A stretch of DNA of 63,765 bases, counting the filler, from Octopus bimaculoides (Eukaryota), in assembly GCF_001194135.2 (NCBI RefSeq). It is 5 parts of 5 records of this genome, joined end to end, with 100 filler letters (N's around TTAATTAATTAA, not from the genome) between each part and the next. Parts side by side here need not be neighbours in the genome. Positions count along the whole stretch, not along the records: positions 1 to 23,742 come from NC_068982.1; 4 more parts are not named here. One strand, written 5' to 3'. Shown here piece after piece: positions 1 through 23,730 of the stretch. Positions within the stretch are counted from its first letter, which is position 1. Each line of letters starts with the position of its first letter. Made by a program: the position numbers and the translations under genes. The notes beneath the pieces were generated by a model that searched no databases, was not told where the DNA came from, and worked only from the letters and a program-made list of their open reading frames with translations.

Positions 1-384
1 TATATATATGTAAGAGAGTTAGGGGTTGAGGATTCAACCCACTATGGGATAGTATCTATCCAATATACTGCTGGGAGGGTACCCAATTATTGTTACACTA
101 GTGTTATACCAAGTGTAATAAGTGGGTGCGGGTAAAGGGGGGGGGTATTTTACCCTAAATTTATATAGCAATTAGAAAATGGAGGATAATATGCAGTACC
201 CAACGACTTGCAGACAGTGTATTCCGTTGAATTAATTAACTTATTTTGTAACTAAAATGACAAAAACCACACAATACAAATGTTTATGACAAACCATGTT
301 ATATTGACAATCGGGGTTACAAATATAAAGTACATTAGGAATTTGAGAATAAACATAAACTTACAGCTGTTTCGGTCTAGCGTT

Positions 385-1432
385 GGCATGCCTCGGATAG
401 AATGGGGCTGATCATACTAGCTCCATTTCTTTCAAGCCTACGCATGTCCTCAGAATTCACGACCCATGTTTCATTGCTGTGTAGCATAGCAGTTCACATA
501 CATGCATCATACAGTCTACCTTTCACCCTGAGTGAGAGGCCCTTAGTTGCCAGCAGAGGTAGGAGCTCCCTGAACTTTCACCAGGCTATTCTTACTCTAG
601 TCACTACACTCTCAGAGCAACCCCCACCCCACTACAGACTTGGTCACCTAGGTAGTAGAAGCTATTAACTACTTCTAGTTTCTTCCCCTGGCATGTGATG
701 GAATCTGTTTTCTGTATATCTTCAGTGTTTATTACCTCAGTGCATCTACCACACACAAAAACTACTTTCCTGGTTAACCTTCCTTTAATATTGCTGCACC
801 TTTTATGTGTTCATAGCTTACACATCGTACATTGTATGGAGTTTCTATCCACACCTTTTCTACAGATTGAGCAGGGCCATCTACCTGAAGGGGGTTGTGA
901 TTTGACAGCCTTCCTACTTACTAAGACGTAGGTTTTGGCTACCTAAGGCCTTTCGATTCTAGACCTTGCTTCCACACCCTAAACTTTGTCTCCAGTTCTG
1001 GCAGTGACTCGGCTATTAGAGCAAGGTTATCAGCATAGAGGAGCTCTCAGGGGCAGCCTGTCTTGAATTCCTCTGTTATTGCCTGGAGGACTATAATGGA
1101 TAAGAGGTGGGGGCCGAGGACTGATCCTTGGTGAATCCCAACTTCTACTCGGAATTCTTCACTATACTTGTTACCCACCCTCACCTTACTGACAGCGTCC
1201 TTGTACAGAGTTTGTACAGCTCTTACCAGCCACTTGTCTATCCCCAGTTTCTACATTGACCACTAGATAAGGGATCGAGGGACACTGTCAAAGGATTTCG
1301 CCAAGTCAACAAAGGCCAAATACAAAGGTTTATCTTTGGCTAGGTATTTCTCCTGCAGTTGCCTTACCAGAAATATAGCATCAGTGGTGCTTCTGCCTGA
1401 TACAAGACCAAAACTGCATCTCATCTAATGCT
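385..1432 (-). mobile_element. RTE-clade LINE fragment (RT region), degenerate
   Basis: Minus strand reads FVDLAKSFDSVPR..VGIHQGSVL..YADNLAL; near-identical to the 40.5-41.5 kb copy. Confidence 0.85.
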
Positions 1433-2388
1433 CTCTCCCTAATTAGTTATATATATATATGTATATANNNNNNNNNNNNNNNNNNNNNNNNNNNNNNNNN
1501 NNNNNNNNNNNNNNNNNNNNNNNNNNNNNNNNNNNNNNNNNNNNNNNNNNNNNNNNNNNNNNNNNNNNNNNNNNNNNNNNNNNNNNNNNNNNNNNNNNNN
1601 NNNNNNNNNNNNNNNNNNNNNNNNNNNNNNNNNNNNNNNNNNNNNNNNNNNNNNNNNNNNNNNNNNNNNNNNNNNNNNNNNNNNNNNNNNNNNNNNNNNN
1701 NNNNNNNNNNNNNNNNNNNNNNNNNNNNNNNNNNNNNNNNNNNNNNNNNNNNNNNNNNNNNNNNNNNNNNNNNNNNNNNNNNNNNNNNNNNNNNNNNNNN
1801 NNNNNNNNNNNNNNNNNNNNNNNNNNNNNNNNNNNNNNNNNNNNNNNNNNNNNNNNNNNNNNNNNNNNNNNNNNNNNNNNNNNNNNNNNNNNNNNNNNNN
1901 NNNNNNNNNNNNNNNNNNNNNNNNNNNNNNNNNNNNNNNNNNNNNNNNNNNNNNNNNNNNNNNNNNNNNNNNNNNNNNNNNNNNNNNNNNNNNNNNNNNN
2001 NNNNNNNNNNNNNNNNNNNNNNNNNNNNNNNNNNNNNNNNNNNNNNNNNNNNNNNNNNNNNNNNNNNNNNNNNNNNNNNNNNNNNNNNNNNNNNNNNNNN
2101 NNNNNNNNNNNNNNNNNNNNNNNNNNNNNNNNNNNNNNNNNNNNNNNNNNNNNNNNNNNNNNNNNNNNNNNNNNNNNNNNNNNNNNNNNNNNNNNNNNNN
2201 NNNNNNNNNNNNNNNNNNNNNNNNNNNNNNNNNNNNNNNNNNNNNNNNNNNNNNNNNNNNNNNNNNNNNNNNNATATACTTCACTTTATCGTGCAGTTAC
2301 TGTTAATACTTCATTTAGAGAATTAACATTGCTTGTTTTCACTTTTTCGATATCAGTGAAGAATTTCACTGGAAAAATATACATAAGG

Positions 2389-2514
2389 TTGCCAAGAATT
2401 TATCTATCTCATCGAAGATCGGTGGCTATCGTACGCTGACGAAGGGAAATAACCCTGAAACCCGGGTCCGTTCGTGCTACGGATCACGATGAGAGGGATA
2501 ACTTCCCTTGGCAA
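2389..2514 (+). ncRNA. Type I hammerhead ribozyme with extended helix I
   Basis: CUGACGA (2436-2442), helix II AGGG/CCCU with loop AAAUAA, GAAA (2457-2460), C-CCGG-G, cleavage triplet GUC (2466-2468); helix I pairs 2430-2435/2469-2474, 2422-2426/2476-2480, 2417-2420/2482-2485, 2407-2414/2487-2494 and 2389-2396/2507-2514. Confidence 0.88.
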
Positions 2515-2866
2515 AACAAACAGGACACAGTAGTGTGTCGATAAGCCAGCTGGAGGAGATGTCCTCCTGGCGCTAAAAGCAACAGTAACATCCACCCCTA
2601 GGGGTCAGCCACACTTAAGTGGCAATATACTTCACTATATATATATGCATATATTCATGTGTAAATACATATATGAACACACATGCACATACACACACAC
2701 GCACACACACACACAAACTGTTCGTATATAAATATAAGTGTGTGTAATACTTAATTATAAAGAAACCAGAGAAATGCTAATCAAATCCTTCTGCTTTCCA
2801 TATATCAACTTGAATATGCTTACACATGCACACATATATAATGTTTAAGGAATGAAATTTTCTTAC

Positions 2867-2953
2867 AATTCTTAAAGGAACAAAAACTGGTATTCCACCA
2901 GCAGTTCTGACCATTGGTTCATAGCAGTCAAAAAATGGCTCAATGATAATAAC
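2867..2953 (-). CDS. KYAT1/3: KYAT coding exon 5 [29 protein letters not shown]
   Basis: 87 nt, cag/gtaag; the [14 protein letters not shown] motif is characteristic of KYAT1/3. Later exons, including the PLP lysine, are not seen and lie in the gap or outside the window. Paralogue 1 versus 3 cannot be resolved. Confidence 0.95.
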
Positions 2954-3319
2954 CTGTGACATGAAAAAACAAAAATGAGAAAAAAAGCCATTTGTAATTA
3001 TTTGCATACAACAATAACAAACAAATTATTTACATACAAAAATAACAAACAATAATAGAACATTAACCCTTTGGAGACGGAGTCTTGTTTGGAATTTCAG
3101 TGCCAAGAAGATGGAGTCCTTTTCACAAGCCTTACAGAGGGCATGCACTTATTTTTCAAAAAAAAAAAAAGTTATAAAAGATAAATTAATGACTTTACAT
3201 ATATAAACCTATATTCACGTAGGAAATTGAATGAACTAATACAATCTTCTTCATTCAACATTTTGGCTGATAGATTGGCTCTTTCATCGTCTAAGGGTTA
3301 ATATGTGTTCATCATGGGA

Positions 3320-3930
3320 TCTTTTCCTGGGCAGTATTTTATGAAAAGGATTGCCAACAGGAAGGACATCCTGATGGCAACACTTTTAGTCACTGTATGG
3401 ATACTCTGAAAGCATAGTTGCTAGAATAAGAATGGGCTGGGCAAAGTTCAGAGAGCTGCTACTTTTGTTGGTAACAAAGAGTCCCTCCTTCTCCTGCAGT
3501 TGTCTTACCAGGAATATAGCATCAGTAGTGCTTCTTCTCGGTACAAATCAAAACTGCATGTTATCTAAGCTAACTCTTTTCCTAATTTGTTGAGCTAAGG
3601 TCTTTTCTGTAACTTTCATCACCTGGTCCAGCAATTTGATACCTCTGTAATTATTTCTGTCTAAGATATTACCTTTAACTTTGTAGCAGTTGATTATAAT
3701 GCTGCTACACCAGCCGTTGGGTGTAGCAACCTGATGGGTTGTGGACAACCTGATTAACTAATATGGGTGACTAGGCTATATCTCACTGAGCCAGGTATTT
3801 TAAGCATCTCAATGGTGATTCCTGATGGGCCAAAGGCTTTCTCTGCCTTCATATCCTTAATTGATAGGTAATATTTCCCCATGGCCTGAGAAACCTCTCA
3901 CAGAAGTCTAGAAATGAACACCACCTGCAT
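3320..3930 (-). mobile_element. RTE LINE fragments, degenerate
   Basis: NYRGIKLLDQVMKVTEK..DNMQF, an RT N-terminal motif. Confidence 0.7.
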
Positions 3931-4857
3931 GACAGAGATGCTTGTATAAAACCATCATGTGACGTCATCACAAGGACATATATGCATGCCCAAACACAAT
4001 CAATCTCACTACCACTCCCCACATACACACAAACAGACATACATATAAACAATAAGCTTCTTTCAGTTTCTATCAACCAAATCCACTAACAAGGCTTTGG
4101 TTGGCTCAGAGCTAAACTAGAGGACATTTTCCCAAGGTACTACAAGATAGAACTCAACTCAAAATTATATGGTTGGGAAACAAGTTTCTTAACCATACAG
4201 TCATGTCTATACCTCAATAATGTCTGCACCAAGCTTTGCCAGTGCCTGTATATGATAAAAAATCAGAGAAAATGTCCTAGAGGGCAATGTTTCTCCTTTC
4301 AGTTCTAATCTTTAATCATCATTATTATTACTATTGTTTTAATATTCAATTTTCCAAGATGGATTATCAAATTACTAATCTACATATATCATCTTTTCAT
4401 ATTACTTAATCCGGCAATATCATTATCACATTTGTGAGGTTTAATCTCAGGTCTTATTCAACTACTTTTTTTCTTTACTTTTTTTCTGTCTTTCTTGTTT
4501 TACTTCTCCCATAAACATGTTCACCAACTGACATAAATTATTCAGATAACATACCTAGAACAATTTTATTGTCCCTCTTCTTTTATAAATATTGAGTAAT
4601 ATCTTTTATGCTTGATTACTGCTTCAACTGCATAATAACCTAGTCTCTTTTTATAAGTTAAAATTTCATATCCAAAAGACAAAATCCTACTCATTCTTTT
4701 TTAATTGCTCCATCATTCTATATTCACTTTACTTACTTCACTGCCATCTCTATATTACTTACAACAGTATCATTATTTTCAGTAACACAACAATAAAATA
4801 ACAATATACATGTTGATCAAGAGAAAGCAATAAGAATTGTCTCCAATTCAGCCTTAC

Positions 4858-5007
4858 CTCATCTCCTGGGTTCAAGAAACCATTTATACAACTGTAAAGA
4901 GCACCATAACCTCCAACTGAAATGAGTATTTCCTTAAATGGATCAATTGTACGGCCCATTATTGGCGAATATACCTTTGATAATACATCAACCAATCGAC
5001 TTTGTCC
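4858..5007 (-). CDS. KYAT1/3: KYAT coding exon 4 GQSRLVDVLSKVYSPIMGRTIDPFKEILISVGGYGALYSCINGFLNPGDE
   Basis: 150 nt, tag/gtaag, phase 0-0; VGGYGAL and PGDE motifs. Confidence 0.95.
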
Positions 5008-5974
5008 CTAGCAATTAAGAAAAAAAGTAGGTAAATACAAAAATTTAAAAAAAACAAATAAAAATATCAAATATCTTTTCATTTGCATGCACACTCACAC
5101 ATCAAGATGCCTATAACAAGAGAAGAGTGAAGCTTCAGGTATCAATGTCCTCAACATGTAAGATTGGGAGCAGGAATGTGAATGGTGGAAGTGACTTGTA
5201 GAGGTGAAAATAGACAACCTCTATCACACTAAACTCATTTATTTAATCTGTTGTGTCTGGGGAGAGTCATTTTCTTTTTGTGCCTTATAATTTAACACAC
5301 TCACCAGTAAAATTTCCACTTATTCCTTATTTTTATTTTCCTAAAATTTCTGTTGCGTCTAACTCACATAAAGAACCTCGCAGACCAAATCCAAAAATGA
5401 AATATCATTTATTTAACATTTCTAAATATCTTTTCACATCATTTAAGTGTACAAATAATACCTCATGACTTAGGGATTAAAATGCATAGTAACCATTAAA
5501 AAGATGGCAACAAGTTTCTTTAGAGAAATCTAGTAACTACTTTGAGCAAATCAAGTGATTTCCTCATCTCAGTCTGAAGAAATGTTTATATACTGATAGA
5601 ATATCAAAATGTTTGGTAGCACAATCATAGAAGAAACATGTCTTATTTTTCACAGCTTAATCAAGAATGCTACTGGCATTTATTATTGCTAAAATCAACT
5701 AAAATCTAAGTTTCACAATATTAAAACTTAGAACTCAACATTACTAGACTTCATCATTAATTAGTGAAAGTAATTTAGCAGTTAATTCTAGCCAGATTAT
5801 TTCTGACAGTGTACAGTTTGGTCATAATTTAACTTCATGAGACATAGCTGACTTATATGTTGGCGTTGCATTCCATTCAGCACATAACAGATGTGAGAAT
5901 CACAGGTGACTAAAGTGATAATGCTGCAGATTAAAAGTTGAAGGGTTGGTTCAAAGTCTACACTATTTCTGACA

Positions 5975-6352
5975 AAGGCACTCCGTCGCTTATGACATCG
6001 AGGGTTCCAGTTGATCTGATCAATGGAACAGCCTGCTCATGAAATTAACATGTAAGTGGCTGAGCACTCCACAGACACGTGTACCCTTAACGTAATTCTC
6101 AGGGAGATTCAGCGTGACACAGTGTGACAAAGCTGACCCTTTGAATTACAGGCACAACAGAAACAGGAAGTAAGAGGGAGAGAAAGTTGTGGTGAAAGAG
6201 TACAGCAGAGTTCACCACCATCCCCTGCCGGAGCCTCGTGGAGCTTTAGGTGTTTTCACTCAATAAATACTCACAACTCCCGGTCTGGGAATCGAAATCG
6301 CGATCCTATGACCACGAGTCCGCTGCCCTAACCACTAGGCCATTGCGCCTCC
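5975..6352 (-). mobile_element. tRNA-derived SINE family C (second copy 48921-49230)
   Basis: Minus-strand head GGAGGCGCAATGGCCTAGTGG..TTCGATTCC; body shared with 48.9 kb. Confidence 0.8.
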
Positions 6353-6757
6353 AACAAAGGCATAATGCCCAGTCAAAAAGACAATTAACAGATGAGATAC
6401 AGCTCATCCATGAGCTATATCTCTTTACATAATTCATTGAATTATGAGACACCCATCCATAACAAAAATGTAGTTGCAAGTGGAAAAGACATCACTACTG
6501 ATACTGTTATCATCAACATTTTCATTATTGTAACTTTGATACTTGATTTTCTCTGCTGAACAGTTCTACAAAATGCTAGTTTTACATGCATTTTGATTAT
6601 GTTACAAATATTGTTCAATCCTGCACCCAGTATAACTATTTCTTTTTAGCTCTTACATCTACAGATACCTTCAAAAAGAAAAAGTTCAGCTGCCATAATG
6701 TAAAAGTTCACCATTTAACTTGTAAAAACAAACAGATCAGAAGAGAGAATTACTTAC

Positions 6758-6856
6758 AAAACCTCGAGTATATTGGTGTAGTAAATGGTTCTTGTTACTA
6801 GCAGCTTCTATCAAAGCGTCTGTAGCAGATGCTGGTGGTTTAAAGTCTGGAAAACC
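6758..6856 (-). CDS. KYAT1/3: KYAT coding exon 3 GFPDFKPPASATDALIEAASNKNHLLHQYTRGF
   Basis: 99 nt, cag/gtaagt, phase 0-0; GFPDF and QYTRGF motifs of the KAT I/III family. Confidence 0.95.
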
Positions 6857-7439
6857 CTGAAATTAATACAGAGTCTGCACATATAATAGTGATTTAATAT
6901 ATATATTACTAACATTTTATATGACCATTACTAACAATGTTTCCACAACGTGTTGCTGTATGCTTGTGAACATGCCGTATGAACAATAAAGATTAAAACT
7001 ATCACATCTTTTAAACTCTGAACAAAAGAAATCTTTGTTATAGTTAAAAAGCTATCTTGGATTGTTTAAAATTGCAGAATTTATGGTAAAAGTTACATTG
7101 ATTTGGTCACTTGGAATGCATAAGTGAGGAAACTGACTAAAGCTTGTTCTCACTAAAGCATTCCAGAAATCAAGGTGGATTACATATGCTCCTGGAGATA
7201 TCTAAATATTGATTATAAGACTAGCACAAAACCAAGAAGAATATAGAAAAGATACAACTATGTTAACAAAATGCCAATGGCTGGCATGCAGATCATTGGT
7301 AGTTAGTATAAGTAATGATTACAGTTAGATATTTGTAGCTTGTTTTATAATTACATATAATACAAAGAAAGCATCAACAACTATAGCATACTTTTGTACA
7401 AGCTTCAATAATGCTGGACATAGGTATAGCATACTAACA

Positions 7440-8100
7440 TTTGCCTTGATCTCTTGTCATCTCTTCAGTGAGGCCCAGTATCCTTCCTTTATCTTCATCT
7501 CCAATGGGAGCCTTCCACTCTGGCCATTCTAGCAATCATCTTTCTTACACCATTTCATTGATGCTGTTGATGCCCACTTATTCTATCAGCTCACCTGTGT
7601 TACACTTTCATGCAAGATAATATAATAACACTTGCTTCATTTTACACTAACTGCTACGTCTTCCAGAATCATACCCATAGGAGCAGTTCAATTTATTAGT
7701 ATTCTTCTGATAACTATTCTTGTGCATCAGATACATCTAACTTCCTGGTTCTCTGTAAGCTTACTAGAGATCTCTCTGAAATATTATGTACTTGTTAGTA
7801 TAATTGAGCACACAGTATCAGACTTCTATCAGCTATCTTTATACATACAAGGTAAGGCTACTTTGAACTCTTAACCATGTTTCCAGATTTTAAACATTTT
7901 CTGCAACTCTTTGGCATATTTTGCTATGCAAACCAGGTCATCAGCACAATGTTCACCAGCACTACAATGAACAGAAGTGACAAGAGAGAGAATCATAGTG
8001 AACAGTTAGTTACCTGTAGACTAAATTGTTCATGGAACATGCTGCCAACCCAAAGCTTGTTAACAGTTACTTTGCAACGGTACAATTCTTAGAAGACTAA
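7440..8100 (-). mobile_element. Old RTE-like LINE RT fragment
   Basis: Frameshifted LLFIVVL..ADDLVCIA remnants. Confidence 0.55.
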
Positions 8101-8419
8101 GCCCAGCACCTACCAAACAACAATTCAAGAACTTCATTTACATAAATATAAAACAGGCGTGCTTGCTTTTAGCAACAAATGTTTCTTTTGGTTATTTCAC
8201 TAGAAATATAGAATCTGTGGCTTCACAACCTAAATAAATCAAAACAGCATCTTATTCAGTCTAACCCTCTCTTGAATTCAGCCCTCTCTTTCACAGTCCA
8301 TCAATGTTATGCCACTGGTTTTCATTTCTAGTAGTTGACGAATATGTTGCTATGTCACACATTAAGGATAGTACTTTCTAGCACAACCCGATTAACTAGG
8401 AAAGCATATGACCTATATA

Positions 8420-8790
8420 TGCTTTCTAAAAAAAATGGTAAAGACTCCCTTTGGTCATGAATGATCGTGGGATTGCACCTAGAAAGTTCCCCTTCAAGGC
8501 GCAAGTCCAGGCAAGGTTGTCATTATGGAAGACCAGCAGTCACCCATGCAAACCAGCCTCCCCTCTCCACACCACTGATGTTATCCAAAGGAAAGGCAAA
8601 GGCCGATACAGCTTGGCACCAGTGATGTGGCAACTCATTTCTACAGCTGAGTGAACTGAAGCAACTTGAAATAGAGTATCTTCCTCAAGAACACAGCACA
8701 CAGCCCAGTCCAGGACTCAAACTCACTATATCATGATTGTGAGCCTAACCCTAACCCTAACCCTAACCCTAACCACTGAGCCATGTGCCT
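8420..8790 (-). mobile_element. Further SINE-like element (central domain also at 37440-37580)
   Basis: CAGCTGAGTGAACTG..CTCAAG(A/G)ACACA domain seen twice. Confidence 0.5.
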
Positions 8791-9796
8791 TAAAATATAT
8801 GCTTTCTAATTCTTGGCAATTATTGTTAGTAAGCATAATGCTAAAATAATGCTTTCCCTGTCTACATATTTTTGATGATCTTAGTAACCATATCACAAGT
8901 TGACATCTGCAGAGAAAATGTGGCAGGAAGAGCAGATTTGGGAATAAAACACAGAAATTGTGATATTTGAGGCAGGCTTGTGTGGAGGAGGCATGCAACC
9001 ATCTAGTACAGAAGAAAAGAATCTACTGATATAGCAATATAATAGACAGCATATCTGTGAGCCAAAAGTATTTGAAAGTTAGTTTTTGTCAATCAGTGGG
9101 CTGGCCATTTGGATGCAGTTGTTTGTAGGAAGTCAATAATGAATCAGGTCTGAAATATTTTCTCATTATGAGAAGGAAGGCTAAGGCCCCTTTGCAGATT
9201 TCATTTAGTATAGTACCAGCTCTCGCACTCATATTTTTCATTCAACAATCCTTTGTAGTGGTACAACAAATGATACATGGAACTCAAATGTCACTATATT
9301 TTTCTTTCACTATTTTTATTTTATCTATTATAGTACCAATAAGAAATATGATTCACACCAGTAGAATGACCTTAACCCAGGTCAAAAGTATATTAACAGG
9401 GTAGCAAAAATATTCATAATTAGAAATTAATAAAAGTGAACAAAATTTTTAGGGAGCATCATAAAGTAATACATAGAAACAGATGTGTGTCAGATTTAGT
9501 TGTTGTTGATTTTGTTTGTTGTTGTTTAGCTCAAATTCAACCTGACTGAGCCAAATGATGATGAATGACATTCCAGCTATGACTATTGCATATCCTTTCT
9601 TCAGGAATGTCTAAGACTACATTGCCAAATGTGTGCCAATGGCAGGATGTGTTACAAGAGAAATTTGGTAACTATTTCTAAGAAGTCAAGACTCTTTTGT
9701 TGCACGTCACAACAAAGATGAGCTTTGCAGCTAGAGAAATAAAATCAAAAATTTCTAACTTAGAGTGAAGTTTAAAAAAGAAGTAATTGAATTTAC

Positions 9797-9848
9797 CTGT
9801 CCAAGGTTGACAACATTATAGTCTACAGCCAGTTTACTCATTTCCACC
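9797..9848 (-). CDS. KYAT1/3: KYAT coding exon 2 (W)VEMSKLAVDYNVVNLGQ
   Basis: 52 nt with cag/gtaaat boundaries; carries the conserved VVNLGQ motif; phase compatible with both neighbours. Confidence 0.93.
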
Positions 9849-11245
9849 CTGTAATTACATAATGTGTTTTTTCATCAAATGAAAGATATCAAGAGCATAT
9901 GATAGAATAAAAAAAATAGAAGATCTATAAATGGCATGATAAAGTATATAGAAACATTACAAAATTAATCAAATAAATTAAAAAATACCTTGTATCAATG
10001 TAAATCAATGTTAAGGAAGAATGCAATCTATTGAAGTAACACCAGTACATGATTGGCACATATTTTATCAAGATCATCATTTTACTGAACTAATGAGGAA
10101 CTCTCTACACAAGTCAACTGATCTGCCAGAAATAAATGTCAAATTTACATCAAATCATATCCTACTGTCTTAAAACAAAGGTAAAAATGCAGAGGACAAT
10201 GTTCTAAAACCTCAACGTTGAAAGAAGAAAATATAGCAATGTGTGGAAAACTTTTGAACATAAGGCTGCTTGACAGGTGCCAACCTAGAGCAAACAAGCC
10301 AAAGAGCTGTCAAACAATGTGAACTCAAACTAAGAAAAGATGGAACTAAAAATACTGTAAAACACTGAGTCTGACACTCTTCCATTTCTGTTTTAATGAA
10401 ACAATACATCATAAATGTTAAATTCAATGAAGACAAAGATGGTAAGTAGGCAGAAGAGAACATGTTATTCAGTATTTAGTTTTGTCTTCATACAGGTTCA
10501 AATCATAACAGAGTAAACTTCACTTTTCAAATATATTCTTCCCAACAAAGTTGGTTTTGTGCAAAAAGAAATCAATATTAATATTGCCCACCCTAAATGC
10601 TGGTCGTTTCGCTCATCACACCAAACTAAACTTAGGTTAATATTGCCTCAGTTCTGGAGCTGGTGGGATTATCCAGAAGAGTGCAGATGGCTTTACCATT
10701 TGTCCCAGGATAAGAGGTAGGTGCCTCATCTGGAATACCACAGTATGTGACTGTTTTGCTCCTCCCCACATCCTGGGTGTGAGAGGGTAAATGGGAGTGT
10801 CACTGCTTCTACAGCCAAATGGAACAAAATCATTGAGTATTGGGACTTGTCAGAGAAAAATTTCTGCCAGCCTTTGGTGTTTGAAACATTTGAAGGGGCT
10901 GAGCTGCTGACAACAAAGTTCTTTTCATTGACAATTACCTTACTAAAGTGTCAGATGATGCCCGTGAGAGTGCTTGATTGTTCCAATTCCTTAGCCTCGC
11001 TGTTGCTCATGGTAATATCATGAGCATGTTGGCTTGCTTCGATAGGTTCCATTGAGTTTTGTGGTGTGCAACCAACTGGGAGGCTTGATGCTGAACTGAT
11101 GTTTTTTCTTCCTTTTTCTTTCTTTCTTCCTCTTTTACTTTTCTCTCTTTGCTCATGTTTGCATTTTCTTCAGTTTTGGACTTGTATTTTCATGTAGTTT
11201 TGTTTTATATATGTATCATATATGCATCATACATGTTTTATATAT

Positions 11246-11560
11246 ATATCACTGAAAGCCTTCAACATCGATCATGCAACTTGGGAGCAGTCTGCTCTAG
11301 ACAGAGAAAGGTGGCGATCAGATGTCCACAAGGGTACCAACACATGCGAGACCAATAGGATCACTGCTGCAGAAGACTGCAGACAAGCTAGGAAGAACAG
11401 AGCTAACAACCCTGTAGCAGGCGCTACCATTCCCTGTCCACACTGTCAAAGACTCTTTCGGGCACAGATTGGCCTCACTAGCCATCTGCGGACTCACAAA
11501 GCCCACCACCACCCCAGGATGACTAGATGGTCTTCGGCGTATCGACGGACAAACTACACA
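11246..11560 (+). mobile_element. RTE/BovB-like LINE 3' end with C2H2 finger
   Basis: SLKAFNID..WEQSALDRERWR..CPHCQRLFRAQIGLTSHLRTH. Confidence 0.8.
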
Positions 11561-11567
11561 CATCATA

Positions 11568-11970
11568 TACTCTTTACTCTTTTACTTGTTTCAATCATTT
11601 GACTGTGGCCATGCTTGAGCACCACCTTTAGTCGAGCAAATCGATTCCAGGACTTATTCTTTGGAAGCCTAGTACTTATTCTATCAATCTATTTTGCCGA
11701 ACTGCTAAGTTACGGGGGGACATAAACACACCAGCATTGGCTGTCAAGCGATGTTGGGGGAACAAACACAGACATAGAAACATATACACACACATACATA
11801 TATATACGACAGGCTTCTTTCAGTTTCCGTCTACCAAATCCACTCACAAGGCTTTGGTCGGCCCGAGGCTATAGTAGAAGACACTTCCCCAAGGTGCCAC
11901 GCAGTGGGACTGAATCCGGAACCATGTGGATGGTAAGCAAGCTACTTACCACACAGCCACTCCTGCACCT
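11568..11970 (-). mobile_element. tRNA-derived SINE family A, full length (others: 12962-13240-, 24965-25262-, 26393-26795-, 27008-27175+, 47414-47580+, 54701-54836-, 58480-58828+, 62885-62965-, 63481-63590+)
   Basis: Head AGG(T/C)GCAGGAGTGGCTGTGTGG with A/B boxes, conserved CCTTGGGCAAG central domain and AAGAGTA tail; about 10 similar copies. Confidence 0.9.
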
Positions 11971-13457
11971 ACGGTTAATTTTACAAACTATTTCTGTTTT
12001 TTGTTTAGAATACGTTTACTTTATGTTGTATTATAAAGAAATTTCCAAGCTGGTATTCTTCTAAATATCATCTGAGATGTCAGAATACTGACAACTGATT
12101 TGATCCAATCTGTCTAACTGACAAAACCTGTTCCAGTGCTACATTATGAATGAGTGATTAGCAACACAAAAGTGCATTATCATTTAGCATCTGTTTTCCA
12201 TGCCGGCATAGGTTAAACAGTCTGACTGGAACTGGCAAGCCGGAGAGCTGTCCCAGGCCCCAGTCTGATTTTAGCTTGGTTTCTACAGCTGAATGCCCTT
12301 CCTGATGCCAACCTCTCCAAGTGTGCAGTGGGTACCTTTTACATGTCACTAGCACAGGTGCCTTTTACATGTCACTGGCACTGTCCATGACTAGAATTTC
12401 ACTTGGCCTGACAAATCTTCTCAAGCACAGCAAACTGCCAACATCTGTGAGACCTACCATCTGAAGATCATGCTTCACCACCTCGTTCTATGTCTTCCTG
12501 GGTCTACCTCTTCCACAGGTTCCCTCAACAGTTAGAGGTTGGCACTTCTTTATGCAGCTGTCCTTGTCTGTAAGCATCATATCTGTAAGCATAGTCTTCT
12601 TTCTCGCACATCACATCTGATGCCCAATTATTCTCTCAAGATGCTTACATTCTGTCGTACACACACACTGACATTGCAAAAAGGGGGCACCCAATCCAAC
12701 TATAAATTTAATCCCTTCAACAGTATGTAAATGTTGAAGCAATTGGTTTTACAACTGAATGCTCTTGATTTTACAATTCCATTCACATAAGCATGGAAAA
12801 TACAAGTCACTGCCATCAGCCATGGTAATAACATCTCCATCAGTGACATTGGTATCATCAACATTTTGTGCCCTTTCTTCCATGCAGACATGAGTTAGAT
12901 TGAATAATAAGTTATTTCAGTGTGTGTGTGTGTGTGTGTGTTTTGTGTGTGTGTGTGTTTATATACTCTTTTACTTGTTTCAGTCATTTGATTGCGGCCA
13001 TGCTGGAGCACCAACTTTAGTCGAGCAAATCGACCCCGGGACCTATTCTTTGCAAGCCTAGTACTTATTCTATCGGTCTCTTTTGCCGAACCGCTAAGTG
13101 ATGGGGACATAAACACACCAGCATCGGTTGTCAAGCAATGCTAGGGGGACAAACACAGACACACAAACACACACATATATATATATATATATACATATAT
13201 ACGACGGGCTTCTTTCAGTTTCCGTCTACCAAATCCACATACACATTCACACGAGTGAGTGGACAAATGACAGAAAGCAACACTAAACACACTTGAGAAG
13301 AGTTTAACTCTGCTTCATAAGACTTAAGATTTTGTTGGAGCCTAACAAGAACCCATCTCATCAGCTATCAAGAGATAGCTGATGAGATGGGTTCATCCAA
13401 TATGCCCATGAAATTCTAAGCCATATGAACTGAGTCAAACAGTTATTAAAATATATA

Positions 13458-14340
13458 CAGGGGGGCAATGGGTAAATTGTTGCCATTTTATATTTTTAAT
13501 TTCATGCATGCGCATTGCTTGTTTTTTATATTGTCAACTACACAGTATAGCAGGATCAGTTGGGCACTGTCTATGAGAAAACCAGCACTATGATGCAATT
13601 CACTCTGCCAGAAATTAGAAAATGACATGCTATACTGCTTGGTATTTGTGCCAGAAGCTCCAATATGAACAGATGGTGAACATACAGAACAACCGTTGGC
13701 TTGCGATGTCCCCAAAACATGTACCTAAAAGTGATAAAAATCAAACATCCAATCAACATCATGGTGTTTGGAGTGATAACTAGTGATGGCGACATTATAC
13801 CTTCATTCATCTTCCCACACAGCCTCACACTCAACACGGAGGCCTACATCAAGTGCCTGGAGGAAGCAGTGCTGCCCTGGGTCAAGAGGGTGGCTACTAG
13901 AAGACCCTATGTCTGGCAACAGGACTCTGCAACCATACCATACAAGCAGGAGAACCCAGTCATAGCTGTCAGACAACTTCTTCAACCACATTACCCCTAA
14001 CATTTGGGCCCCCCGCCAACTCCCTAGACTGCAACCCCCTTGATTACTATGTGTGGGGCACAGTTGAGCGAGAGACCAACAAAACTCCTTGTAACACTAC
14101 AGATGAACTGAAGGCAAGGATTATGGCAGCATTGACTAACTTAAACAAGACCATCCAGAAGAGTTGCAGGTGAGTCGTCTGGAGGTTGTGGTTGAAGCCA
14201 ATGATGATTTTATTGAATAAATTTACTCTTTAGTATTTTAAGATATTTTTATGTAATTTTGGTAAATATATCTGTTAAAATGAGAAGTCAGTGTCATTTT
14301 CACTTTTGCATAATATAGACAATATATTCACCACACCCTG
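13458..14340 (+). mobile_element. maT (DD37D) Tc1/mariner transposon, internally deleted
   Basis: TA-CAGGG...CCCTG-TA ends with imperfect TIRs; VMVFGVITSDG..VWQQDSA..NS(P)DCNPLDYYVWG; about 37-residue D-D spacing after frameshift repair. Confidence 0.88.
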
Positions 14341-15082
14341 TATATATACTAGAAAGAAAGAAAGATATCCATATAAAAGTCAACTATACTGTCTTCAAAG
14401 GGAGAATTAAAGATAGTAATTCTTCAACAATGGAACTGGTAACTACTAATATCCTTTATTAATGATATTCTGTAGCTAATACAAAGAAATTGCAGCAGCA
14501 GCGGCAGCAGCAACAAAAGTGGCACTAATAACAGATATAGTAAAACAAATAATTATTGATGTAAATTTGAAAAGTGGAAATTTTTATTTTTTGTAGTAAT
14601 TAAATAAGTAGATAGAAATAAAAATATATAAATAATGTAATAGACATTATTTATATGTGATAGACAGTAAATAATAATAAAAATGATGATATTCCTATCT
14701 ACTATAGGCACCAAGCTTGAAATTTGTCAGGAGAGGGTTAGTTGATTACATCAACTCCGGTGCTTAACAGGTTTTTATTTCGCTGACCTCAAAAGGATGA
14801 AAGGCAAAGTCATCTTGACAGAATTTGAACTCAGAAGGTAAAGACATGAAATACCATTAAGCATTTTGTCTGACATGCTAAAAAAGGGTAATAATAATAA
14901 CAAAGAAAAGAAGAAGAAGAAGCTGATGAGAAGAAAAGAAAAAAAGGGAAATGAAGATGAAGAAGAAAAGAGGTAAGGAGAACAGAGAGGTACAGAGAGA
15001 TAAAAATGAATAAATAATTGAAATAGCCCAGCCTCAGATCAAATTACTTGCCAGATTATAAATGAGAGAGTATGTGTATTAT

Positions 15083-15139
<57 letters not shown>

Positions 15140-15186
15140 NNNNNNNNNNNNNNNNNNNNNNNNNNNNNNNNNNNNNNNNNNNNNNN

Positions 15187-15244
<58 letters not shown>

Positions 15245-15249
<5 letters not shown>

Positions 15250-15665
15250 AGTACAGGTCATGTACAGGAGTGCTGTTAGTAAGGTAAGAGTTAGCCATAT
15301 GTACAGTTATGAATTTAGTGTACAGGCAGGTGTTCGCTAGGGCTCAATCCTCAGCCCCCTCCTATTAATCATTGTCTTCCAGACCATAACAGAGGAGTTA
15401 AGGACTGGAAGCCCATGAAAACTACTAAATACTGATGATCTGACCCTCATAGCAGAATCTATAACAGAATTAGAAAAGAAATTCTCAGTGAAGAAACAGA
15501 ACCTAGAATCAAAGGGCCTTAAAGTAAACTTAGCTAAGATCAAGGTCATAGTAAACAAAAAATTGGAAAGGACACTTCACCCTTCAGTAAATGGCCCTGC
15601 TCAATATGTAAGAAGGATGTAAGCAAAATTCCATTTGGTGTACAAAAAGTGCAGTGGAAAGGTTA
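15245..15665 (+). mobile_element. RTE LINE RT fragment, internally deleted
   Basis: MYRSAVSKVRV..GCPWKLLNTDDL-like..ESKGLKVNLAKIKV; same family as the 41 kb copy. Confidence 0.7.
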
Positions 15666-16371
15666 ACAGAGAGGTTAACACAGGAAATTGTATAAGCAAG
15701 AACTCGTCTGATTAAAGCTATGTACATTTTACATTTTTTTCATTATAACACGAACAGCAATAACAGATGTGAGCTAACAAGAAAGAGAATGAAAGGTATA
15801 GGAAAGAGGTAACACAAGAGCAGAGGGATGAAACACTACAATGAACACAAAGCAGCAGCAGAGAAACAGTGGAAGGAAACATGAAAGAAAACAGTATTTA
15901 CAAAAAAATGAGAGAAAAAGTTGAAGCAAACTAACTATTGTTTTAGTTGTCAACAACCAAGAAATTCTTACTTATTTCATCATCATCAGTTGTAGTAGTA
16001 GTGAGGTGGTAAGCTGGCAGAATTGTTAGCATACTGGACAAAATGCTTAGAGACATTTCTTCCAACTCATTACATTCTGAGTTCAAATTCCACTGAGGTA
16101 AACTGTTTCATCCTTTTGTGGTCAATAAAATAAGTACCACTTTGACTCTGGGGTTGGTGTAATTGACTTATCTCCAATCCCCAAATTGCAGGCCTTGTGC
16201 CAAAATTCGAAATCATCATTATTTTTGTTATTCTGCTGAGATCAACTTTACCTTTCTTCCTCTCAGGATCAATAAAATAAGTACCAGTTGAGCACTGGGG
16301 TCAATATAGTTGACTTATCCCCAATCCCAAAATTGCTGGCCTTGTGCCAAAATTTGAAATCATTATTACTA

Positions 16372-16900
16372 TTACCTCCACCTTAACAAAAGCAGAGGTA
16401 TTGTTTTCAGTTGAGTTTGTTTGTTTGTTTGTCTGTGGACAAGATATCTCAAGAACCACTGGATAGATTCAGATGAAACTTTCAGGGATGTTTGGCTTTG
16501 TGACTGGCATGAACTGATTAGATTTTGGGATCGATTCAGAACTGGATAAGGATTCTGGATTATTTGTTATATTTACTTTACCTGAAGTATTACAATCTTA
16601 CGCTTACTTTCAAGTCTTTCTCTGATTTTTCATTTGTTATATTTACTTTACATGAAGTATTACAATGTTATGTTCTTTGATTATCTCCCTTGAAAGCACA
16701 CTCATGGTTTCCACATAAGTTATGGCAGTGTTGCTGTTTCCAAAGTTTTATTTTCGTTTCTTTATTATTAATTTTACTCGCGTTTCTATCTTAGTAGAAA
16801 CTGATAGATAAAGAAATAAAACTACATAAACAAACAGCAGCAAAACCATTCAGAAATTAAATAACACTAACATATTCAGCAACAATGATAAATTTAATTT
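16372..16900 (+). mobile_element. Non-autonomous DNA element, DINE/Helentron-like (related pieces at 17420-17630 and 24195-24580)
   Basis: Shared ACCTCC..GAGGT end, (GTTT)n-GTCTGTGGAC tract and conserved body in three places. Confidence 0.5.
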
Positions 16901-17020
16901 ATCCTTGACAATTTTTAGTTTTATCAATTTTGAATATATCACTCCTGTTTAAAACCTCTTACCTACTTGACAACTGCATTTCTAGCTATGCATTGAAGGA
17001 AAATTTACTTCTTGGACTCA

Positions 17021-17380
17021 CATTTTTGTGTGCAATGATGTTAAACCTCCATCAACAGCACCATATGCAGGTTTTTTCCGTTTTCTTTCATGCATGGATA
17101 AATTTTCACTATAGATTTTAATGGTCGTAGAGACACTATATCAGTGGATAGACTAAAAATGGATTCACGTTTTTGTGTGCAATGATGTTGTTAAATCTTT
17201 GTTAACAGCACTGTATGCAGGTCCTTTCCATTTTCTTTCACTCATGGATAAATTTTTCACTATAGATTTTAACGGTCGTAGAGACACTATATCAGTGGAT
17301 AGACTAAAAAAGGCCTTCATAGAGAAAACTGTCCCTGTTCCCATTGCAGACAATACACACACAGCATTACAAATACGGCT
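17021..17380 (+). mobile_element. Ty3/Gypsy integrase C-terminal (GPY/F) fragment, tandemly duplicated
   Basis: HIFVCNDVVK..LYAGPF..DKFFTIDFNGRRDTISVDRLKKA; an about 140-bp segment is present twice. Confidence 0.65.
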
Positions 17381-17779
17381 CACACACCCACCTTCACATT
17401 CCTTGACTACCATTTGGATCGATCTGGTACCAGATAAAGATTCAGGATTGTTTTTCCAGTTTTTTCCCTTAATTTTTGAGAGTAGTCGGGTTCATTTTTA
17501 GTATTCTTGTTTGTGAGAGCAGTCGAGTTTATTTCAAATATTCTCATTCTAAAAATCATCTCCGGCTGATCGTTGAGAGGACGTTGGTGTTGCCTTGGCA
17601 GAGGTCTGCGCTCTCTGAGTGCTCTTATTATTATTATCATTATTATGATTACTAACGCAGCAAGCTGGCAGAACTGGCATTTCATCCACCTTTACATTCA
17701 TCATCATCATCCAGTGTTTTAAATCTGGGTTTTGTCCCCATTAATGGGGGTGGCCAGATCTATCTCAGTGCCATAGTAA

Positions 17780-18430
17780 CTGCCCTCACACCATCTCACC
17801 ATTTTTTGGGGCATCCTTCCTTCCCAATCTCCTCCTCCACCTGTCCCCTCATTTTTCTCGGTCCATTTACCTCAAACTCAAGCACCCTCCCCAGAATAAG
17901 TTCCTCATCTCTCCTCAACACATACCCATACCACCGCACTCCATTCGTCCTTGCCAGTCATTCCACCAATTCCTCCAACCCCAGCATCCCATCAAGTCCT
18001 CAGTCCTCCTCTTATCAAACAGTTTCACTCCACACATTTCTCTCACCATTACTCTCTCAGTCCTTCTCAAAATTCACATCTCTCTCTCCCTCAGAGACCA
18101 TGTCTCACTCCCATACAGCATTGCAGCTCTCACGCAATTCCTATAGACCCTTCCTTTCATCTTCAATGAGAACCTTTTCCCATATAACAATGCTCTACAT
18201 TCCCTGAACTTCACCCAGCCAAGTCTTGCTCTTGCTGTCATAGCTGCTTCACATTCACCCTATCTCCCAAATAACAAAATCCTCTCACCATTTCCACCTT
18301 TGTCACATAACATTTCCACTGGTTCTGCCAGCCCTCCAGCTCCATTCTCCCATCTTCCACAAACAAACTTTCTTGCCAGTCTTGGGGTCACCTTCTTCAT
18401 TTTCGTACATCTACCATGAATCCATTTCTC
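17780..18430 (-). mobile_element. RTE LINE C-terminal fragment
   Basis: KWIHGRCTKMKKVTPRLARKFVCGR..FCYLGDRVN; 3' RT-tail sequence. Confidence 0.65.
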
Positions 18431-18994: not shown

Positions 18995-19050
18995 CAAACA
19001 TTCTTTTCACTGCCATAGTATTTCTTGGCTAATGAAAGTTTAGTTGACAT
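18995..19050 (-). CDS. KYAT1/3: Kynurenine--oxoglutarate transaminase (KYAT1/3, CCBL family), first coding exon MSTKLSLAKKYYGSEKNV(W)
   Basis: ATG at 19050-19048, preceded by AAAA and a cag acceptor (19057-19055); gtgagt donor after 18995; the phase-2 end TG joins the G of the next exon to give the conserved Trp of N-x-W-V-E. Confidence 0.85.
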
Positions 19051-23620: not shown

Positions 23621-23680
23621 CTATATACATATATATACATATATATATAAATACATATATATATATACACATATATATAT

Positions 23681-23730
<50 letters not shown>

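What the first reader, a model, noticed from the sequence alone, without database searches (positions are those of the whole stretch)
2389..2514. Apparently intact, full-length type I hammerhead ribozyme in a KYAT intron
Seen: all core residues are present, with CUGACGA (2436-2442), a 4-bp helix II AGGG/CCCU capped by AAAUAA, GAAA (2457-2460) and a GUC triplet, giving predicted cleavage between 2468 and 2469. Helix I has a 6-nt proximal segment (5 of 6 paired), then a UAU/U internal loop, then about 30 further bp out to 2389/2514. Established: this 6-nt stem plus 3-nt UAY bulge plus AAAUA-containing loop 2 is the architecture of the Schistosoma Sm-alpha hammerhead, where bulge-loop contacts give fast cleavage at physiological Mg2+. 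Inference: the motif is young or under selection and probably active. It is antisense to KYAT, so it would not cut the KYAT pre-mRNA and implies a separate + strand transcript.
Basis: partly seen in the sequence, partly recalled or inferred. Interest (0 to 1): 0.92.

Follow-up and report, generated by a model that had tools for sequence, protein, structure and literature searches.

The report
Hammerhead ribozyme on an octopus retroelement
A small self-cutting RNA motif (a hammerhead ribozyme of the usual animal type) really is encoded here, but it sits on a roughly 350-base mobile-element copy inside an octopus gene intron, which is the ordinary, already described home of such ribozymes in animal genomes.

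Summary
A descriptor finds it once in the window against 0.0025 expected per shuffled window.

No Rfam hammerhead model matches it. But Rfam's type I model recognised only 3 of 12 clean hammerheads of the same architecture, so that miss is weak evidence. A model built from four experimentally validated animal ribozymes plus the Rfam consensus hits it at 24.4 bits (E 1e-5; next best 9.7).

The motif fits the published definition of the canonical metazoan hammerhead. Helix III is 2 bp with a palindromic tetraloop (ACCCGGGU), which allows dimer cleavage. It lies in a 352-nt, 43% GC, strongly self-paired unit bounded by a 12-nt direct repeat, TA microsatellite and an 806-N assembly gap. It is antisense in a KYAT intron of an Octopus genome.

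Best reading: a solo or terminal copy of a non-LTR retrozyme (Sm-alpha-like element). Activity is untested: A10.1-U11.1 replaces the conserved G-C pair. No paralogues could be fetched. It is a new member of a known kind, of modest interest.

The parts
2274..2625 (+). 352-nt hammerhead-bearing unit (retrozyme-like / Sm-alpha-like short retroelement), 43% GC
   Evidence: Bounded by the 12-nt direct repeat and the N gap. The circular fold is -110.5 kcal/mol, z = -6.1 against shuffles, with 59% of bases paired. No open frame has protein relatives. CpG o/e is 0.85 against 0.28 in the window.
2274..2285 (+). Left copy of the 12-nt direct repeat ATATACTTCACT, immediately after the assembly gap
   Evidence: Sequence read directly. 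It is either a target-site duplication or the start of the unit.
2626..2637 (+). Right copy of the 12-nt direct repeat ATATACTTCACT, followed by TA/CA microsatellite
   Evidence: It is either a target-site duplication or the first 12 nt of a second, truncated unit (terminal redundancy).
2389..2514 (+). Long imperfect hairpin (extended helix I rod) with the ribozyme core at its tip
   Evidence: 37 helix I pairs, 2 of them G.U. MFE is -52.8 kcal/mol, z = -5.6.
2427..2429 (+). Loop 1: UAU bulge on the 5' strand of helix I (opposite U2475)
   Evidence: The same U-A-Y / U layout occurs in L006, L008, L009 and L010.
2430..2435 (+). Helix I, 5' strand (CGUACG)
   Evidence: Pairs with 2469-2474; 5 of 6 paired, U2432.U2472 mismatch.
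2436..2442 (+). Catalytic core, first half: C3 U4 G5 A6 C7 G8 A9
2443..2456 (+). Helix II (AGGG/CCCU, 4 bp) with loop 2 AAAUAA; A10.1-U11.1 replaces the usual G-C
   Evidence: The pairs are fully compensated relative to other hammerheads, and the A-U at 10.1/11.1 is unique among the 13 compared.
2457..2459 (+). Catalytic core, second half: G12 A13 A14
2460..2467 (+). Helix III: A15.1-U16.1 and C15.2-G16.2 closed by tetraloop CCGG; ACCCGGGU is an 8-nt palindrome able to form an intermolecular helix III in a hammerhead dimer
   Evidence: It matches the published description of helix III in animal hammerheads (PMC4209133).
2468..2469 (+). C17 and the predicted self-cleavage site (between 2468 and 2469)
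   Evidence: Position relative to the core. Inferred, not assayed.
2469..2474 (+). Helix I, 3' strand (CGUUCG)
1468..2273 (.). 806-N sized assembly gap abutting the start of the unit; it could hide further tandem units or only microsatellite
   Evidence: Gaps in the window have different sizes (806, 47, 149, 100), as in the O. bimaculoides assembly (L015).
2870..2957 (-). KYAT exon ([28 protein letters not shown]), context only; the hammerhead unit lies in the intron downstream of it, on the opposite strand

Best explanation
The locus encodes a canonical metazoan type I hammerhead ribozyme. It is carried on a 352-nt, non-coding, highly self-paired short retroelement of the non-LTR retrozyme / Schistosoma Sm-alpha kind. 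The element is inserted in a TA-rich microsatellite, antisense in an intron of the KYAT gene of an Octopus genome.

Shown: the motif, its helices, the unit's size, composition and fold, its flanks, and its orientation.

Inferred mechanism: when the + strand is transcribed, the RNA folds with helix I extended into a rod. Loop 1 (UAU/U) contacts loop 2 (AAAUAA). The core then catalyses transesterification 3' of C2468, leaving a 2',3'-cyclic phosphate and a 5'-OH at C2469. Helix III is only 2 bp but lies within the palindrome ACCCGGGU. Two copies, in a tandem transcript or in trans, can therefore pair to form a stable double hammerhead, which is the efficient cleavage mode for many animal hammerheads.

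In an active family, unit-length RNAs released from tandem copies are circularised by a host tRNA ligase and copied back into DNA by a retrotransposon reverse transcriptase, probably of a Penelope-like element. The visible copy is one unit plus 12 nt. It can give a unit-length or circular RNA only if another copy lies in the adjacent 806-N gap. Otherwise it is a solo offspring copy that at most cuts its transcript once. It cannot cut the KYAT pre-mRNA, which has the opposite polarity.
For: Motif and chance: the motif is present at the stated coordinates. It is the only descriptor hit in the window, against 0.0025 expected per shuffled window.

Covariance models: the independent model R2, built from four experimentally validated coral, mussel and axolotl retrozyme hammerheads plus the Rfam consensus, gives 24.4 bits, E 1.3e-5, full length at 2430-2474. 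The next hit scores 9.7 bits. Model R1 gives 39.8 bits.

Published definition: the motif meets the published definition of canonical metazoan hammerheads. That definition is helix I 6 bp, helix II 4 bp, helix III 1-2 bp with a 2-4 nt palindromic loop (PMC4209133).

Natural relatives: twelve natural hammerheads with the same layout were fetched from metagenomes. They show covarying helices I and II. Across 13 sequences 85.5% of cells are paired against 65.7% in shuffles, and the covariation score is 0.617 against 0.241.

Unit features: the unit matches non-LTR retrozymes (150-450 bp, GC below 45-50%, highly self-paired; PMC7229834). It is 352 nt, 43% GC, with a circular fold z of -6.1.

Context: it is flanked by TA microsatellite, a known insertion preference of Penelope-like elements (PMC8557442). 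Solo monomers are common in retrozyme families. Dispersed, 5'-truncated solo hammerhead elements occur in another organism (L009, L011, L014).

Fold competition: the gap between the MFE fold and the hammerhead fold is 7.0 kcal/mol, the same as for the active coral (7.6) and mussel (7.4) ribozymes.

Age: CpG retention in the hairpin (o/e 1.31 against 0.28 in the window; P = 3e-4) argues that the copy is not old.
Against: No Rfam hammerhead model matches, even at E <= 10 on 76 nt. This is weakened by the control.

No second copy of the unit was found anywhere. There is none elsewhere in the window. There is none in 50 kb of other Octopus DNA. A six-frame protein search found nothing, and an exact-pattern metagenome scan found nothing. 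Family membership and tandem arrangement are therefore unproven.

A10.1-U11.1 replaces the highly conserved G-C pair, and helix I has a U.U mismatch. It is the lowest-scoring hammerhead under R2 (24.4 against 29-49 bits).

The orthologous stretch in O. sinensis could not be compared, because the contig diverges at window position 3855 and then ends.
Confidence: 0.7

Rival explanations
1. The motif is a genuine descendant of a hammerhead-bearing retroelement but is now a catalytically dead or very weak relic. It would have no processing role at this locus.
For: A10.1-U11.1 occurs in 0 of the 12 comparators, and G10.1-C11.1 is described as highly conserved (PMC4209133). Helix I has a U2432.U2472 mismatch. 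It has the lowest score among hammerheads with model R2. No Rfam hit was obtained. Helix III of 2 bp generally needs a partner copy, and none is visible. Only 1 of 9 predicted frog retrozyme dimers cleaved in vitro.
Against: All invariant core positions and the GUC triplet are intact. Both 10.1 and 11.1 are changed so that pairing is kept, and compensatory changes at these positions are also seen in cricket satellite hammerheads (PMC2837043). Mussel retrozyme hammerheads with the same 2-bp helix III plus tetraloop cleave efficiently (PMC7229834). CpG retention argues against long neutral decay.
Confidence: 0.3
2. It is the hammerhead of a terminal pseudo-LTR of an autonomous Penelope-like element whose coding part is hidden in the gap or was lost.
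For: Penelope-like elements carry hammerheads in their terminal repeats and insert into microsatellites such as (TA)n. The unit abuts an assembly gap and TA repeats. Retrozymes are related to such terminal repeats.
Against: Metazoan PLE hammerheads are minimal variants: no or 1-bp helix III, helix II of 6-8 bp, helix I of 4-5 bp, and no loop-loop nucleotides. This one is canonical. The gap is sized at about 806 nt, too small for a reverse transcriptase plus endonuclease ORF. The sequence left of the gap is an unrelated RVT_1-type LINE fragment on the other strand. To the right are microsatellite and a KYAT exon.
Confidence: 0.08
3. It is a chance constellation: a hammerhead-like core arising at the tip of an unrelated inverted repeat.
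For: The descriptor rate of 0.0025 per 23-kb window still implies a few hundred chance hits in a genome of gigabase size. The first stage scanned many windows. No Rfam hit was obtained.
Against: Features not in the descriptor also agree with natural hammerheads. These are the UAU/U internal loop exactly 6 bp from the core, loop 2 AAAUAA, a palindromic helix III, C15.2-G16.2, and a 32-bp continuation of helix I. By my rough estimate they lower the chance expectation by several orders of magnitude. The independent CM gives E 1.3e-5.
Confidence: 0.04
4. It is a domesticated, host-serving intronic ribozyme, like the conserved amniote HH9/HH10 hammerheads, or it produces an antisense transcript that regulates KYAT.
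For: It lies in an intron about 250 nt from an exon. The core is intact and CpG is retained.
Against: It is on the strand opposite to the host gene, so it is absent from the pre-mRNA. It is framed by a direct repeat, microsatellite and a gap, like an insertion. No HH9/HH10 match was obtained. Conservation in a second species could not be examined.
Confidence: 0.04

Closest known systems
Canonical metazoan type I hammerhead ribozymes of non-LTR retrozymes (Cervera & de la Pena 2020, PMC7229834; defined in PMC4209133), e.g. the mussel Mg353 and axolotl Ax353 ribozymes
   Same: Type I topology; a complete core; helix I of 6 bp; helix II of 4 bp; helix III of 2 bp with a palindromic tetraloop (mussel GCGC, axolotl ACGU, here CCGG). 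Axolotl Ax353 also has a 3-nt/1-nt internal loop after helix I. The carrier unit is about 350 nt, low in GC and strongly self-paired.
   Different: A10.1-U11.1 replaces G-C. Helix II has purines on its 5' strand (AGGG/CCCU). Only one unit plus 12 nt is visible, not a tandem array. No sequence similarity exists outside the ribozyme. No expression or cleavage data exist.
Schistosoma mansoni Sm-alpha hammerhead (Rfam RF00163 Hammerhead_1 consensus)
   Same: Helix I of 6 bp, helix II of 4 bp, a 6-nt A-rich loop 2 containing AAAUA, CUGACGA with C7, GAAAC...GUC, and a palindromic helix III. It is carried on a short non-autonomous retroelement.
   Different: Loop 2 is AAAUAA rather than CAAAUA. Helix II is AGGG/CCCU rather than GUCC/GGAC. 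It scores below any reportable level with the Rfam model, which recognises only the GUCC/GGAC relatives.
Hammerheads with loop 2 AAAUAA from metagenome contigs L002-L012 and L014 (source organisms unknown, GC 34-44%)
   Same: Identical spacing of all elements, the same loop 2, and a UAU/UAC bulge with a single opposing U in several. L005 has a long helix I extension. They sit on short dispersed repeats of about 160-560 nt.
   Different: All have G10.1-C11.1, and most have loop 3 AGCU. There is no sequence similarity outside the ribozyme, and they share no repeats with Octopus DNA.
Minimal hammerheads of Penelope-like elements
   Same: Type I core, a palindromic 15.2-16.2 region, dimer-mode logic, and association with microsatellite insertion sites.
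   Different: PLE motifs lack helix III or have 1 bp. They have a longer helix II and a shorter helix I, with no loop-loop nucleotides, and they flank a reverse transcriptase/endonuclease ORF. None of this applies here.

Membership tests
Type I hammerhead ribozyme (canonical metazoan form) | Conserved core CUGANGA ... GAAA ... with A15.1-U16.1 and a non-G at position 17 | tested here: met
   CUGACGA 2436-2442, GAAA 2457-2460, U2467, C2468.
Type I hammerhead ribozyme (canonical metazoan form) | Type I topology: helices II and III closed by loops, helix I open; helix I about 6 bp and helix II 4 bp | tested here: met
   Helix I has 5 of 6 pairs and helix II 4 of 4. Full-length alignment to models R1 and R2.
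Type I hammerhead ribozyme (canonical metazoan form) | Short helix III (1-2 bp) capped by a small palindromic loop | tested here: met
   A-U and C-G plus CCGG; ACCCGGGU is a palindrome. Definition from PMC4209133.
Type I hammerhead ribozyme (canonical metazoan form) | Loop 1 / loop 2 nucleotides able to make the tertiary contact | tested here: inconclusive
   The UAU/U bulge and AAAUAA loop are the same as in several natural relatives. The contact itself cannot be tested by sequence.
Type I hammerhead ribozyme (canonical metazoan form) | Highly conserved G10.1-C11.1 pair | tested here: not met
   A2443-U2456: paired, but A-U. This occurs in 1 of 13 sequences compared.
Type I hammerhead ribozyme (canonical metazoan form) | Match to Rfam RF00163 at the gathering score | tested here: not met
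   No hit at gathering or at E <= 10. Control: only 3 of 12 clean relatives pass.
Type I hammerhead ribozyme (canonical metazoan form) | Site-specific self-cleavage | not testable with these tools
   Needs in vitro transcription or RNA end mapping.
Non-LTR retrozyme (metazoan) | Repeat unit of about 150-450 bp with low GC (<45-50%) and no ORF, LTR, PBS or PPT | tested here: met
   352 nt, 43% GC. No protein relatives for any frame. No tRNA-like part.
Non-LTR retrozyme (metazoan) | Highly self-paired unit-length RNA | tested here: met
   Circular fold -110.5 kcal/mol, z = -6.1.
Non-LTR retrozyme (metazoan) | Tandem arrangement (dimers to multimers) so that two cleavages release a unit | tested here: inconclusive
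   One unit plus the first 12 nt of a possible second. An 806-N gap lies directly upstream.
Non-LTR retrozyme (metazoan) | Multi-copy family within the genome | tested here: inconclusive
   No other copy in the window, in L001 or in L015. No whole Octopus genome is searchable with these tools.
Non-LTR retrozyme (metazoan) | Expression as linear and circular unit-length RNA | not testable with these tools
   Needs RNA data.
Penelope-like element terminal-repeat hammerhead | Minimal motif (no or 1-bp helix III, long helix II) flanking a reverse transcriptase / GIY-YIG ORF | tested here: not met
   The architecture is canonical. The neighbours are a LINE fragment on the other strand, microsatellite and a KYAT exon.
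Amniote intronic hammerheads HH9/HH10 | Match to RF02275/RF02277 and sense orientation in the host intron | tested here: not met
   No Rfam match. It is antisense to KYAT.

The most novel reading that the evidence does not exclude
Octopus may harbour a so far undescribed, currently active retrozyme family. Its hammerhead would use an A10.1-U11.1 pair and would escape Rfam-based annotation. The 806-N gap would hide tandem copies, so this locus would produce abundant unit-length circular RNAs antisense to KYAT pre-mRNA, with possible effects on that gene.
Probability: 0.15. Interest if true: 0.5.

Novelty: new member of a known kind. Interest (0 to 1): 0.3.

Why it matters
If the copy belongs to an active family, it extends hammerhead-bearing circular-RNA retroelements to octopods. 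It would also add a natural ribozyme with an A-U pair at the metal-binding 10.1/11.1 position, a useful variant for structure-function work.

The more practical lesson concerns method. The Rfam type I hammerhead model missed this motif entirely. It also missed 9 of 12 clean relatives at its gathering score. Rfam-based counts of hammerheads in animal genomes, such as the 235 reported for the giant squid, are therefore probably large underestimates.

For KYAT itself nothing follows, because the ribozyme is on the other strand.

Tried and rejected
1. Rfam at gathering score on the whole piece, then at E <= 10 on 426 nt and on 76 nt: no hammerhead family appeared. The only hits were weak microRNA-like matches to the TA/CA microsatellite at 2635-2700, far below gathering. 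I treat those as chance.

2. Looking for paralogues by translating all six frames of the unit and searching the 5.8-billion-protein collection: nothing.

3. Exact-pattern scan of metagenome contigs with the ribozyme's own helix II and loop 2: nothing. The generic pattern gave analogues, not paralogues.

4. Orthologue comparison. The O. sinensis contig with KYAT exons is colinear at about 90% identity with window 3855-20727. It then diverges and ends, so the hammerhead region has no counterpart there.

5. Exact-product look-up of the ORF spanning the adjacent KYAT exon, to find other assemblies that might close the gap: not on record.

6. Sampling O. bimaculoides DNA through a LINE protein gave 20 kb with no copy. 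Larger sampling was not feasible with the look-up caps.

7. Literal sequence strings in the paper library: no paper.

8. SINE-type tRNA head: no tRNA-like sequence.

9. I considered the alternative register with cleavage after 2472. I rejected it because it needs an 8-nt loop 3 and loses the palindromic helix III.

10. I considered the lower nearest-neighbour energy of a competing fold (-52.1 against -45.1 kcal/mol) as evidence against activity. I rejected that because validated coral and mussel ribozymes show the same gap.

Full report
**1. Observation**

On the + strand:
- CGUACG (2430-2435) pairs with CGUUCG (2469-2474) in five of six positions; U2432.U2472 is the mismatch.
- CUGACGA occupies 2436-2442.
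- AGGG (2443-2446) pairs with CCCU (2453-2456) around the loop AAAUAA.
- GAAA is at 2457-2460.
- A2460-U2467 and C2461-G2466 close the tetraloop CCGG.
- C2468 is position 17, so the scissile bond would lie between 2468 and 2469.

Beyond the six-pair helix I there is a UAU (2427-2429) / U2475 internal loop. Then come 32 more pairs out to 2390/2513. That gives 37 helix I pairs in all, of which only two are G.U. The 141-nt region folds at -52.8 kcal/mol, z = -5.6.

**2. Chance**

I wrote a type I hammerhead descriptor of the kind used in the literature. It requires CUGANGA, a perfect helix II, GAAA, helix III including A15.1-U16.1, a non-G at 17, and at least 5 of 6 pairs in helix I.
- It finds this one locus on both strands of the 23.7-kb piece.
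- It finds 0.0025 loci per dinucleotide-shuffled piece.

That rate alone would still allow a few hundred chance hits in a genome of gigabase size. But several features lie outside the descriptor: the position and sequence of the internal loop, loop 2, the palindromic helix III, and the long continuation of helix I. All of them match natural hammerheads. By my rough estimate this removes chance as a serious explanation.

**3. Covariance models**

No Rfam hammerhead family matches. This holds at gathering score on the whole piece, at E <= 10 on 426 nt, and at E <= 10 on 76 nt.

A scan of metagenome contigs used only the generic layout, CTGANGA-4-AAATAA-4-GAAAC-4-GTC. It returned 13 loci.
- 11 have a perfect 4-bp helix II, one has 3 of 4 pairs, and one (L013) is not a hammerhead. 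That leaves 12 hammerheads. Their helix II sequences covary, and most have a well-paired helix I.
- Several have a UAU or UAC bulge opposite a single U, exactly six pairs from the core.
- Rfam RF00163 passed only three of these twelve, namely those whose helix II is GUCC/GGAC as in the Schistosoma-like consensus.

The Rfam model is therefore narrow, and its silence here is weak evidence.

I then built two models.
- R2 uses only sequences independent of the candidate. These are four experimentally validated retrozyme hammerheads (coral, mussel, two axolotl) taken from the supplement of PMC7229834, plus the Rfam consensus.
  - It hits 2430-2474 (+) full length at 24.4 bits, E 1.3e-5. The next hit in the piece scores 9.7 bits.
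  - The same model scores the twelve metagenome hammerheads at 29-49 bits. The octopus motif is a clear member but the weakest one.
- R1 also includes eight metagenome sequences and gives 39.8 bits. That figure is inflated, because those eight were selected with a pattern derived from the candidate.

**4. What kind of hammerhead**

PMC4209133 defines the canonical metazoan hammerhead as follows:
- type I topology;
- helix I of 6 bp and helix II of 4 bp, interacting through loop nucleotides;
- helix III of 1-2 bp capped by a 2-4 nt palindromic loop;
- often efficient only when two copies form a dimer with an extended helix III.

The candidate fits each point. ACCCGGGU (2460-2467) is a perfect palindrome. 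The mussel ribozyme has the same 2-bp helix III with tetraloop GCGC, and axolotl Ax353 has ACGU.

In an alignment of the candidate with the twelve comparators the shared structure is well supported.

| Measure | Observed | Control |
|---|---|---|
| Cells paired | 85.5% | 65.7% (shuffles) |
| Covariation score | 0.617 | 0.241 (shuffles); at most 0.156 (slid controls) |

The candidate's helix II is fully compensated.

Its one departure from the definition is A10.1-U11.1 in place of the highly conserved G-C pair. This occurs in one of thirteen sequences. Compensatory changes at these two positions are, however, known in cricket satellite hammerheads (PMC2837043).

**5. The carrier**

The ribozyme is not free-standing. 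Several features frame it as an insertion.
- The sequence from 2274 to 2625 (352 nt, 43% GC) begins with ATATACTTCACT. The same 12 nt follow its end at 2626-2637, after which TA/CA microsatellite begins.
- Immediately upstream is an 806-N gap, and TA repeats lie on the far side of the gap.
- Gaps in the piece differ in length (806, 47, 149, 100). This matches the O. bimaculoides assembly, of which I fetched 20 kb. The gaps are therefore probably size estimates.

Folded as a circle, the unit reaches -110.5 kcal/mol with z = -6.1. None of its reading frames has any relative among 5.8 billion proteins. It has no tRNA-like part.

Size, composition, self-pairing and lack of coding capacity are those of metazoan non-LTR retrozymes (PMC7229834). 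These are thought to be mobilised by Penelope-like elements, which favour microsatellite targets such as (TA)n (PMC8557442; bioRxiv 10.64898/2026.07.22.740005).

The 12-nt repeat has two possible readings, and I cannot tell them apart without an empty site or other copies:
- a target-site duplication, which in animal retrozymes is longer than 4 bp when present;
- terminal redundancy from copying a circular template slightly more than once.

Solo monomers are common in retrozyme families. In one unidentified organism among the metagenome hits, the hammerhead sits on a roughly 220-nt dispersed element. Its copies share a 3' end and differ in 5' truncation.

**6. Host and orientation**

Four KYAT exons lie on the minus strand. 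The best protein match is Octopus sinensis kynurenine--oxoglutarate transaminase 3 at 92% identity. The O. sinensis contig is colinear with window 3855-20727 at about 90% nucleotide identity.

The piece is therefore from a congener. It is probably O. bimaculoides, judging by the gap style and shared repeats. That is an inference, not a test.

The unit lies about 250 nt into the intron that follows the exon at 2957-2870, on the opposite strand. It cannot cut the KYAT pre-mRNA.

**7. Age and activity**

- **CpG retention:** CpG observed/expected is 0.28 for the piece and 0.24 and 0.09 for the two LINE fragments nearby. It is 0.85 for the unit and 1.31 for the hairpin. The unit has 14 CpGs where 4.6 would be expected at the local rate, P = 3e-4. 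This suggests a copy that has not sat long in a CpG-decaying region. Part of the signal may simply reflect the composition of the ribozyme.
- **Activity:** this cannot be decided here.
  - In favour: an intact core, a GUC triplet, compensated helices, and the right loops. The energy gap between the nearest-neighbour optimum and the hammerhead fold is 7.0 kcal/mol, equal to that of the active coral (7.6) and mussel (7.4) ribozymes.
  - Against: the A-U pair at 10.1/11.1, the U.U mismatch in helix I, the short helix III with no visible partner copy, and the low model score. In addition, only one of nine predicted frog retrozyme dimers cleaved in vitro.

**8. What is known, and novelty**

Hammerheads of this architecture have been described in animal genomes since 1987. 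They are now understood as parts of retrozymes and related elements, including in molluscs (PMC7229834). The giant squid genome paper lists 235 Rfam hammerhead_1 loci (PMC6962438).

I found no paper describing this octopus element or its sequence. It is therefore a new member of a known kind. It has one unusual base pair and carries a useful warning about the sensitivity of the Rfam model.

**9. Limits**

I could not obtain a single paralogue or an orthologous site, so three questions remain open:
- whether this is a multi-copy family;
- whether the units are arranged in tandem;
- whether there is covariation within the family.

These are the decisive computations, and they need a full Octopus genome.

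Noticed in passing
L002-L014 (metagenome contigs), e.g. L009:1646-1690, L005:73-117: Rfam RF00163 (Hammerhead_1, 45 positions, gathering 34 bits) passed only 3 of 12 clean type I hammerheads that share the canonical animal architecture. The three that passed have helix II GUCC/GGAC. Rfam-based hammerhead counts in animal genomes are likely to be underestimates.
   Followed up: partly
L009:1600-1758, L011:1284-1505, L014:6564-6785: In one unidentified low-GC organism (contigs ERZ1740055), the same hammerhead sits on a roughly 220-nt dispersed element. Its copies share a common 3' end and have variable 5' truncation, the signature of target-primed reverse transcription.
   Followed up: partly
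window 380-1424 (-) and 3389-3897 (-): Two separate fragments of an RVT_1-type LINE reverse transcriptase, with stops and frameshifts, lie on either side of the hammerhead unit and the KYAT exon. Both are strongly CpG-depleted (o/e 0.24 and 0.09).
   Followed up: partly
window 23129-23551 (-), next to the (TA)n run at 23622-23742: A 141-residue open frame whose YIG...R..EH and CC.LC motifs remind me of the GIY-YIG endonuclease of Penelope-like elements. It has no Pfam match even at E <= 10 and no PDB sequence match, so this is only a lead from memory.
   Followed up: partly
window 2635-2700: Weak matches to mir-297 and other microRNA families (41 bits against a gathering score of 90) fall on the TA/CA microsatellite just downstream of the unit. 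They look like low-complexity artefacts.
   Followed up: no
window 3855 / L001:26555: Colinearity with the O. sinensis KYAT contig (about 90% identity over 17 kb) stops abruptly here. The O. sinensis contig continues with unrelated sequence and ends in a TA microsatellite, so the two species differ by at least one large insertion or deletion in this intron.
   Followed up: partly
window 8744-8774: Five perfect copies of CCTAAC (an interstitial telomere-like hexamer run) lie inside the KYAT intron.
   Followed up: no
window 13680-14170 (+): Open frames with a look of a Tc1/mariner-type transposase C-terminal part (from memory). They had no Pfam hit at E <= 0.01.
   Followed up: partly
window 17013-17310; 16083-16374 and 18759-18903: A 151-nt tandem duplication (87% match), and three copies of a roughly 145-nt SINE-like repeat also found in the O. 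bimaculoides locus L015 at 88-91% identity.
   Followed up: no
whole piece 1-23742: Overall CpG observed/expected is only 0.28 at 35% GC. This indicates strong CpG decay in this gene body and makes the CpG-rich hammerhead hairpin stand out.
   Followed up: yes
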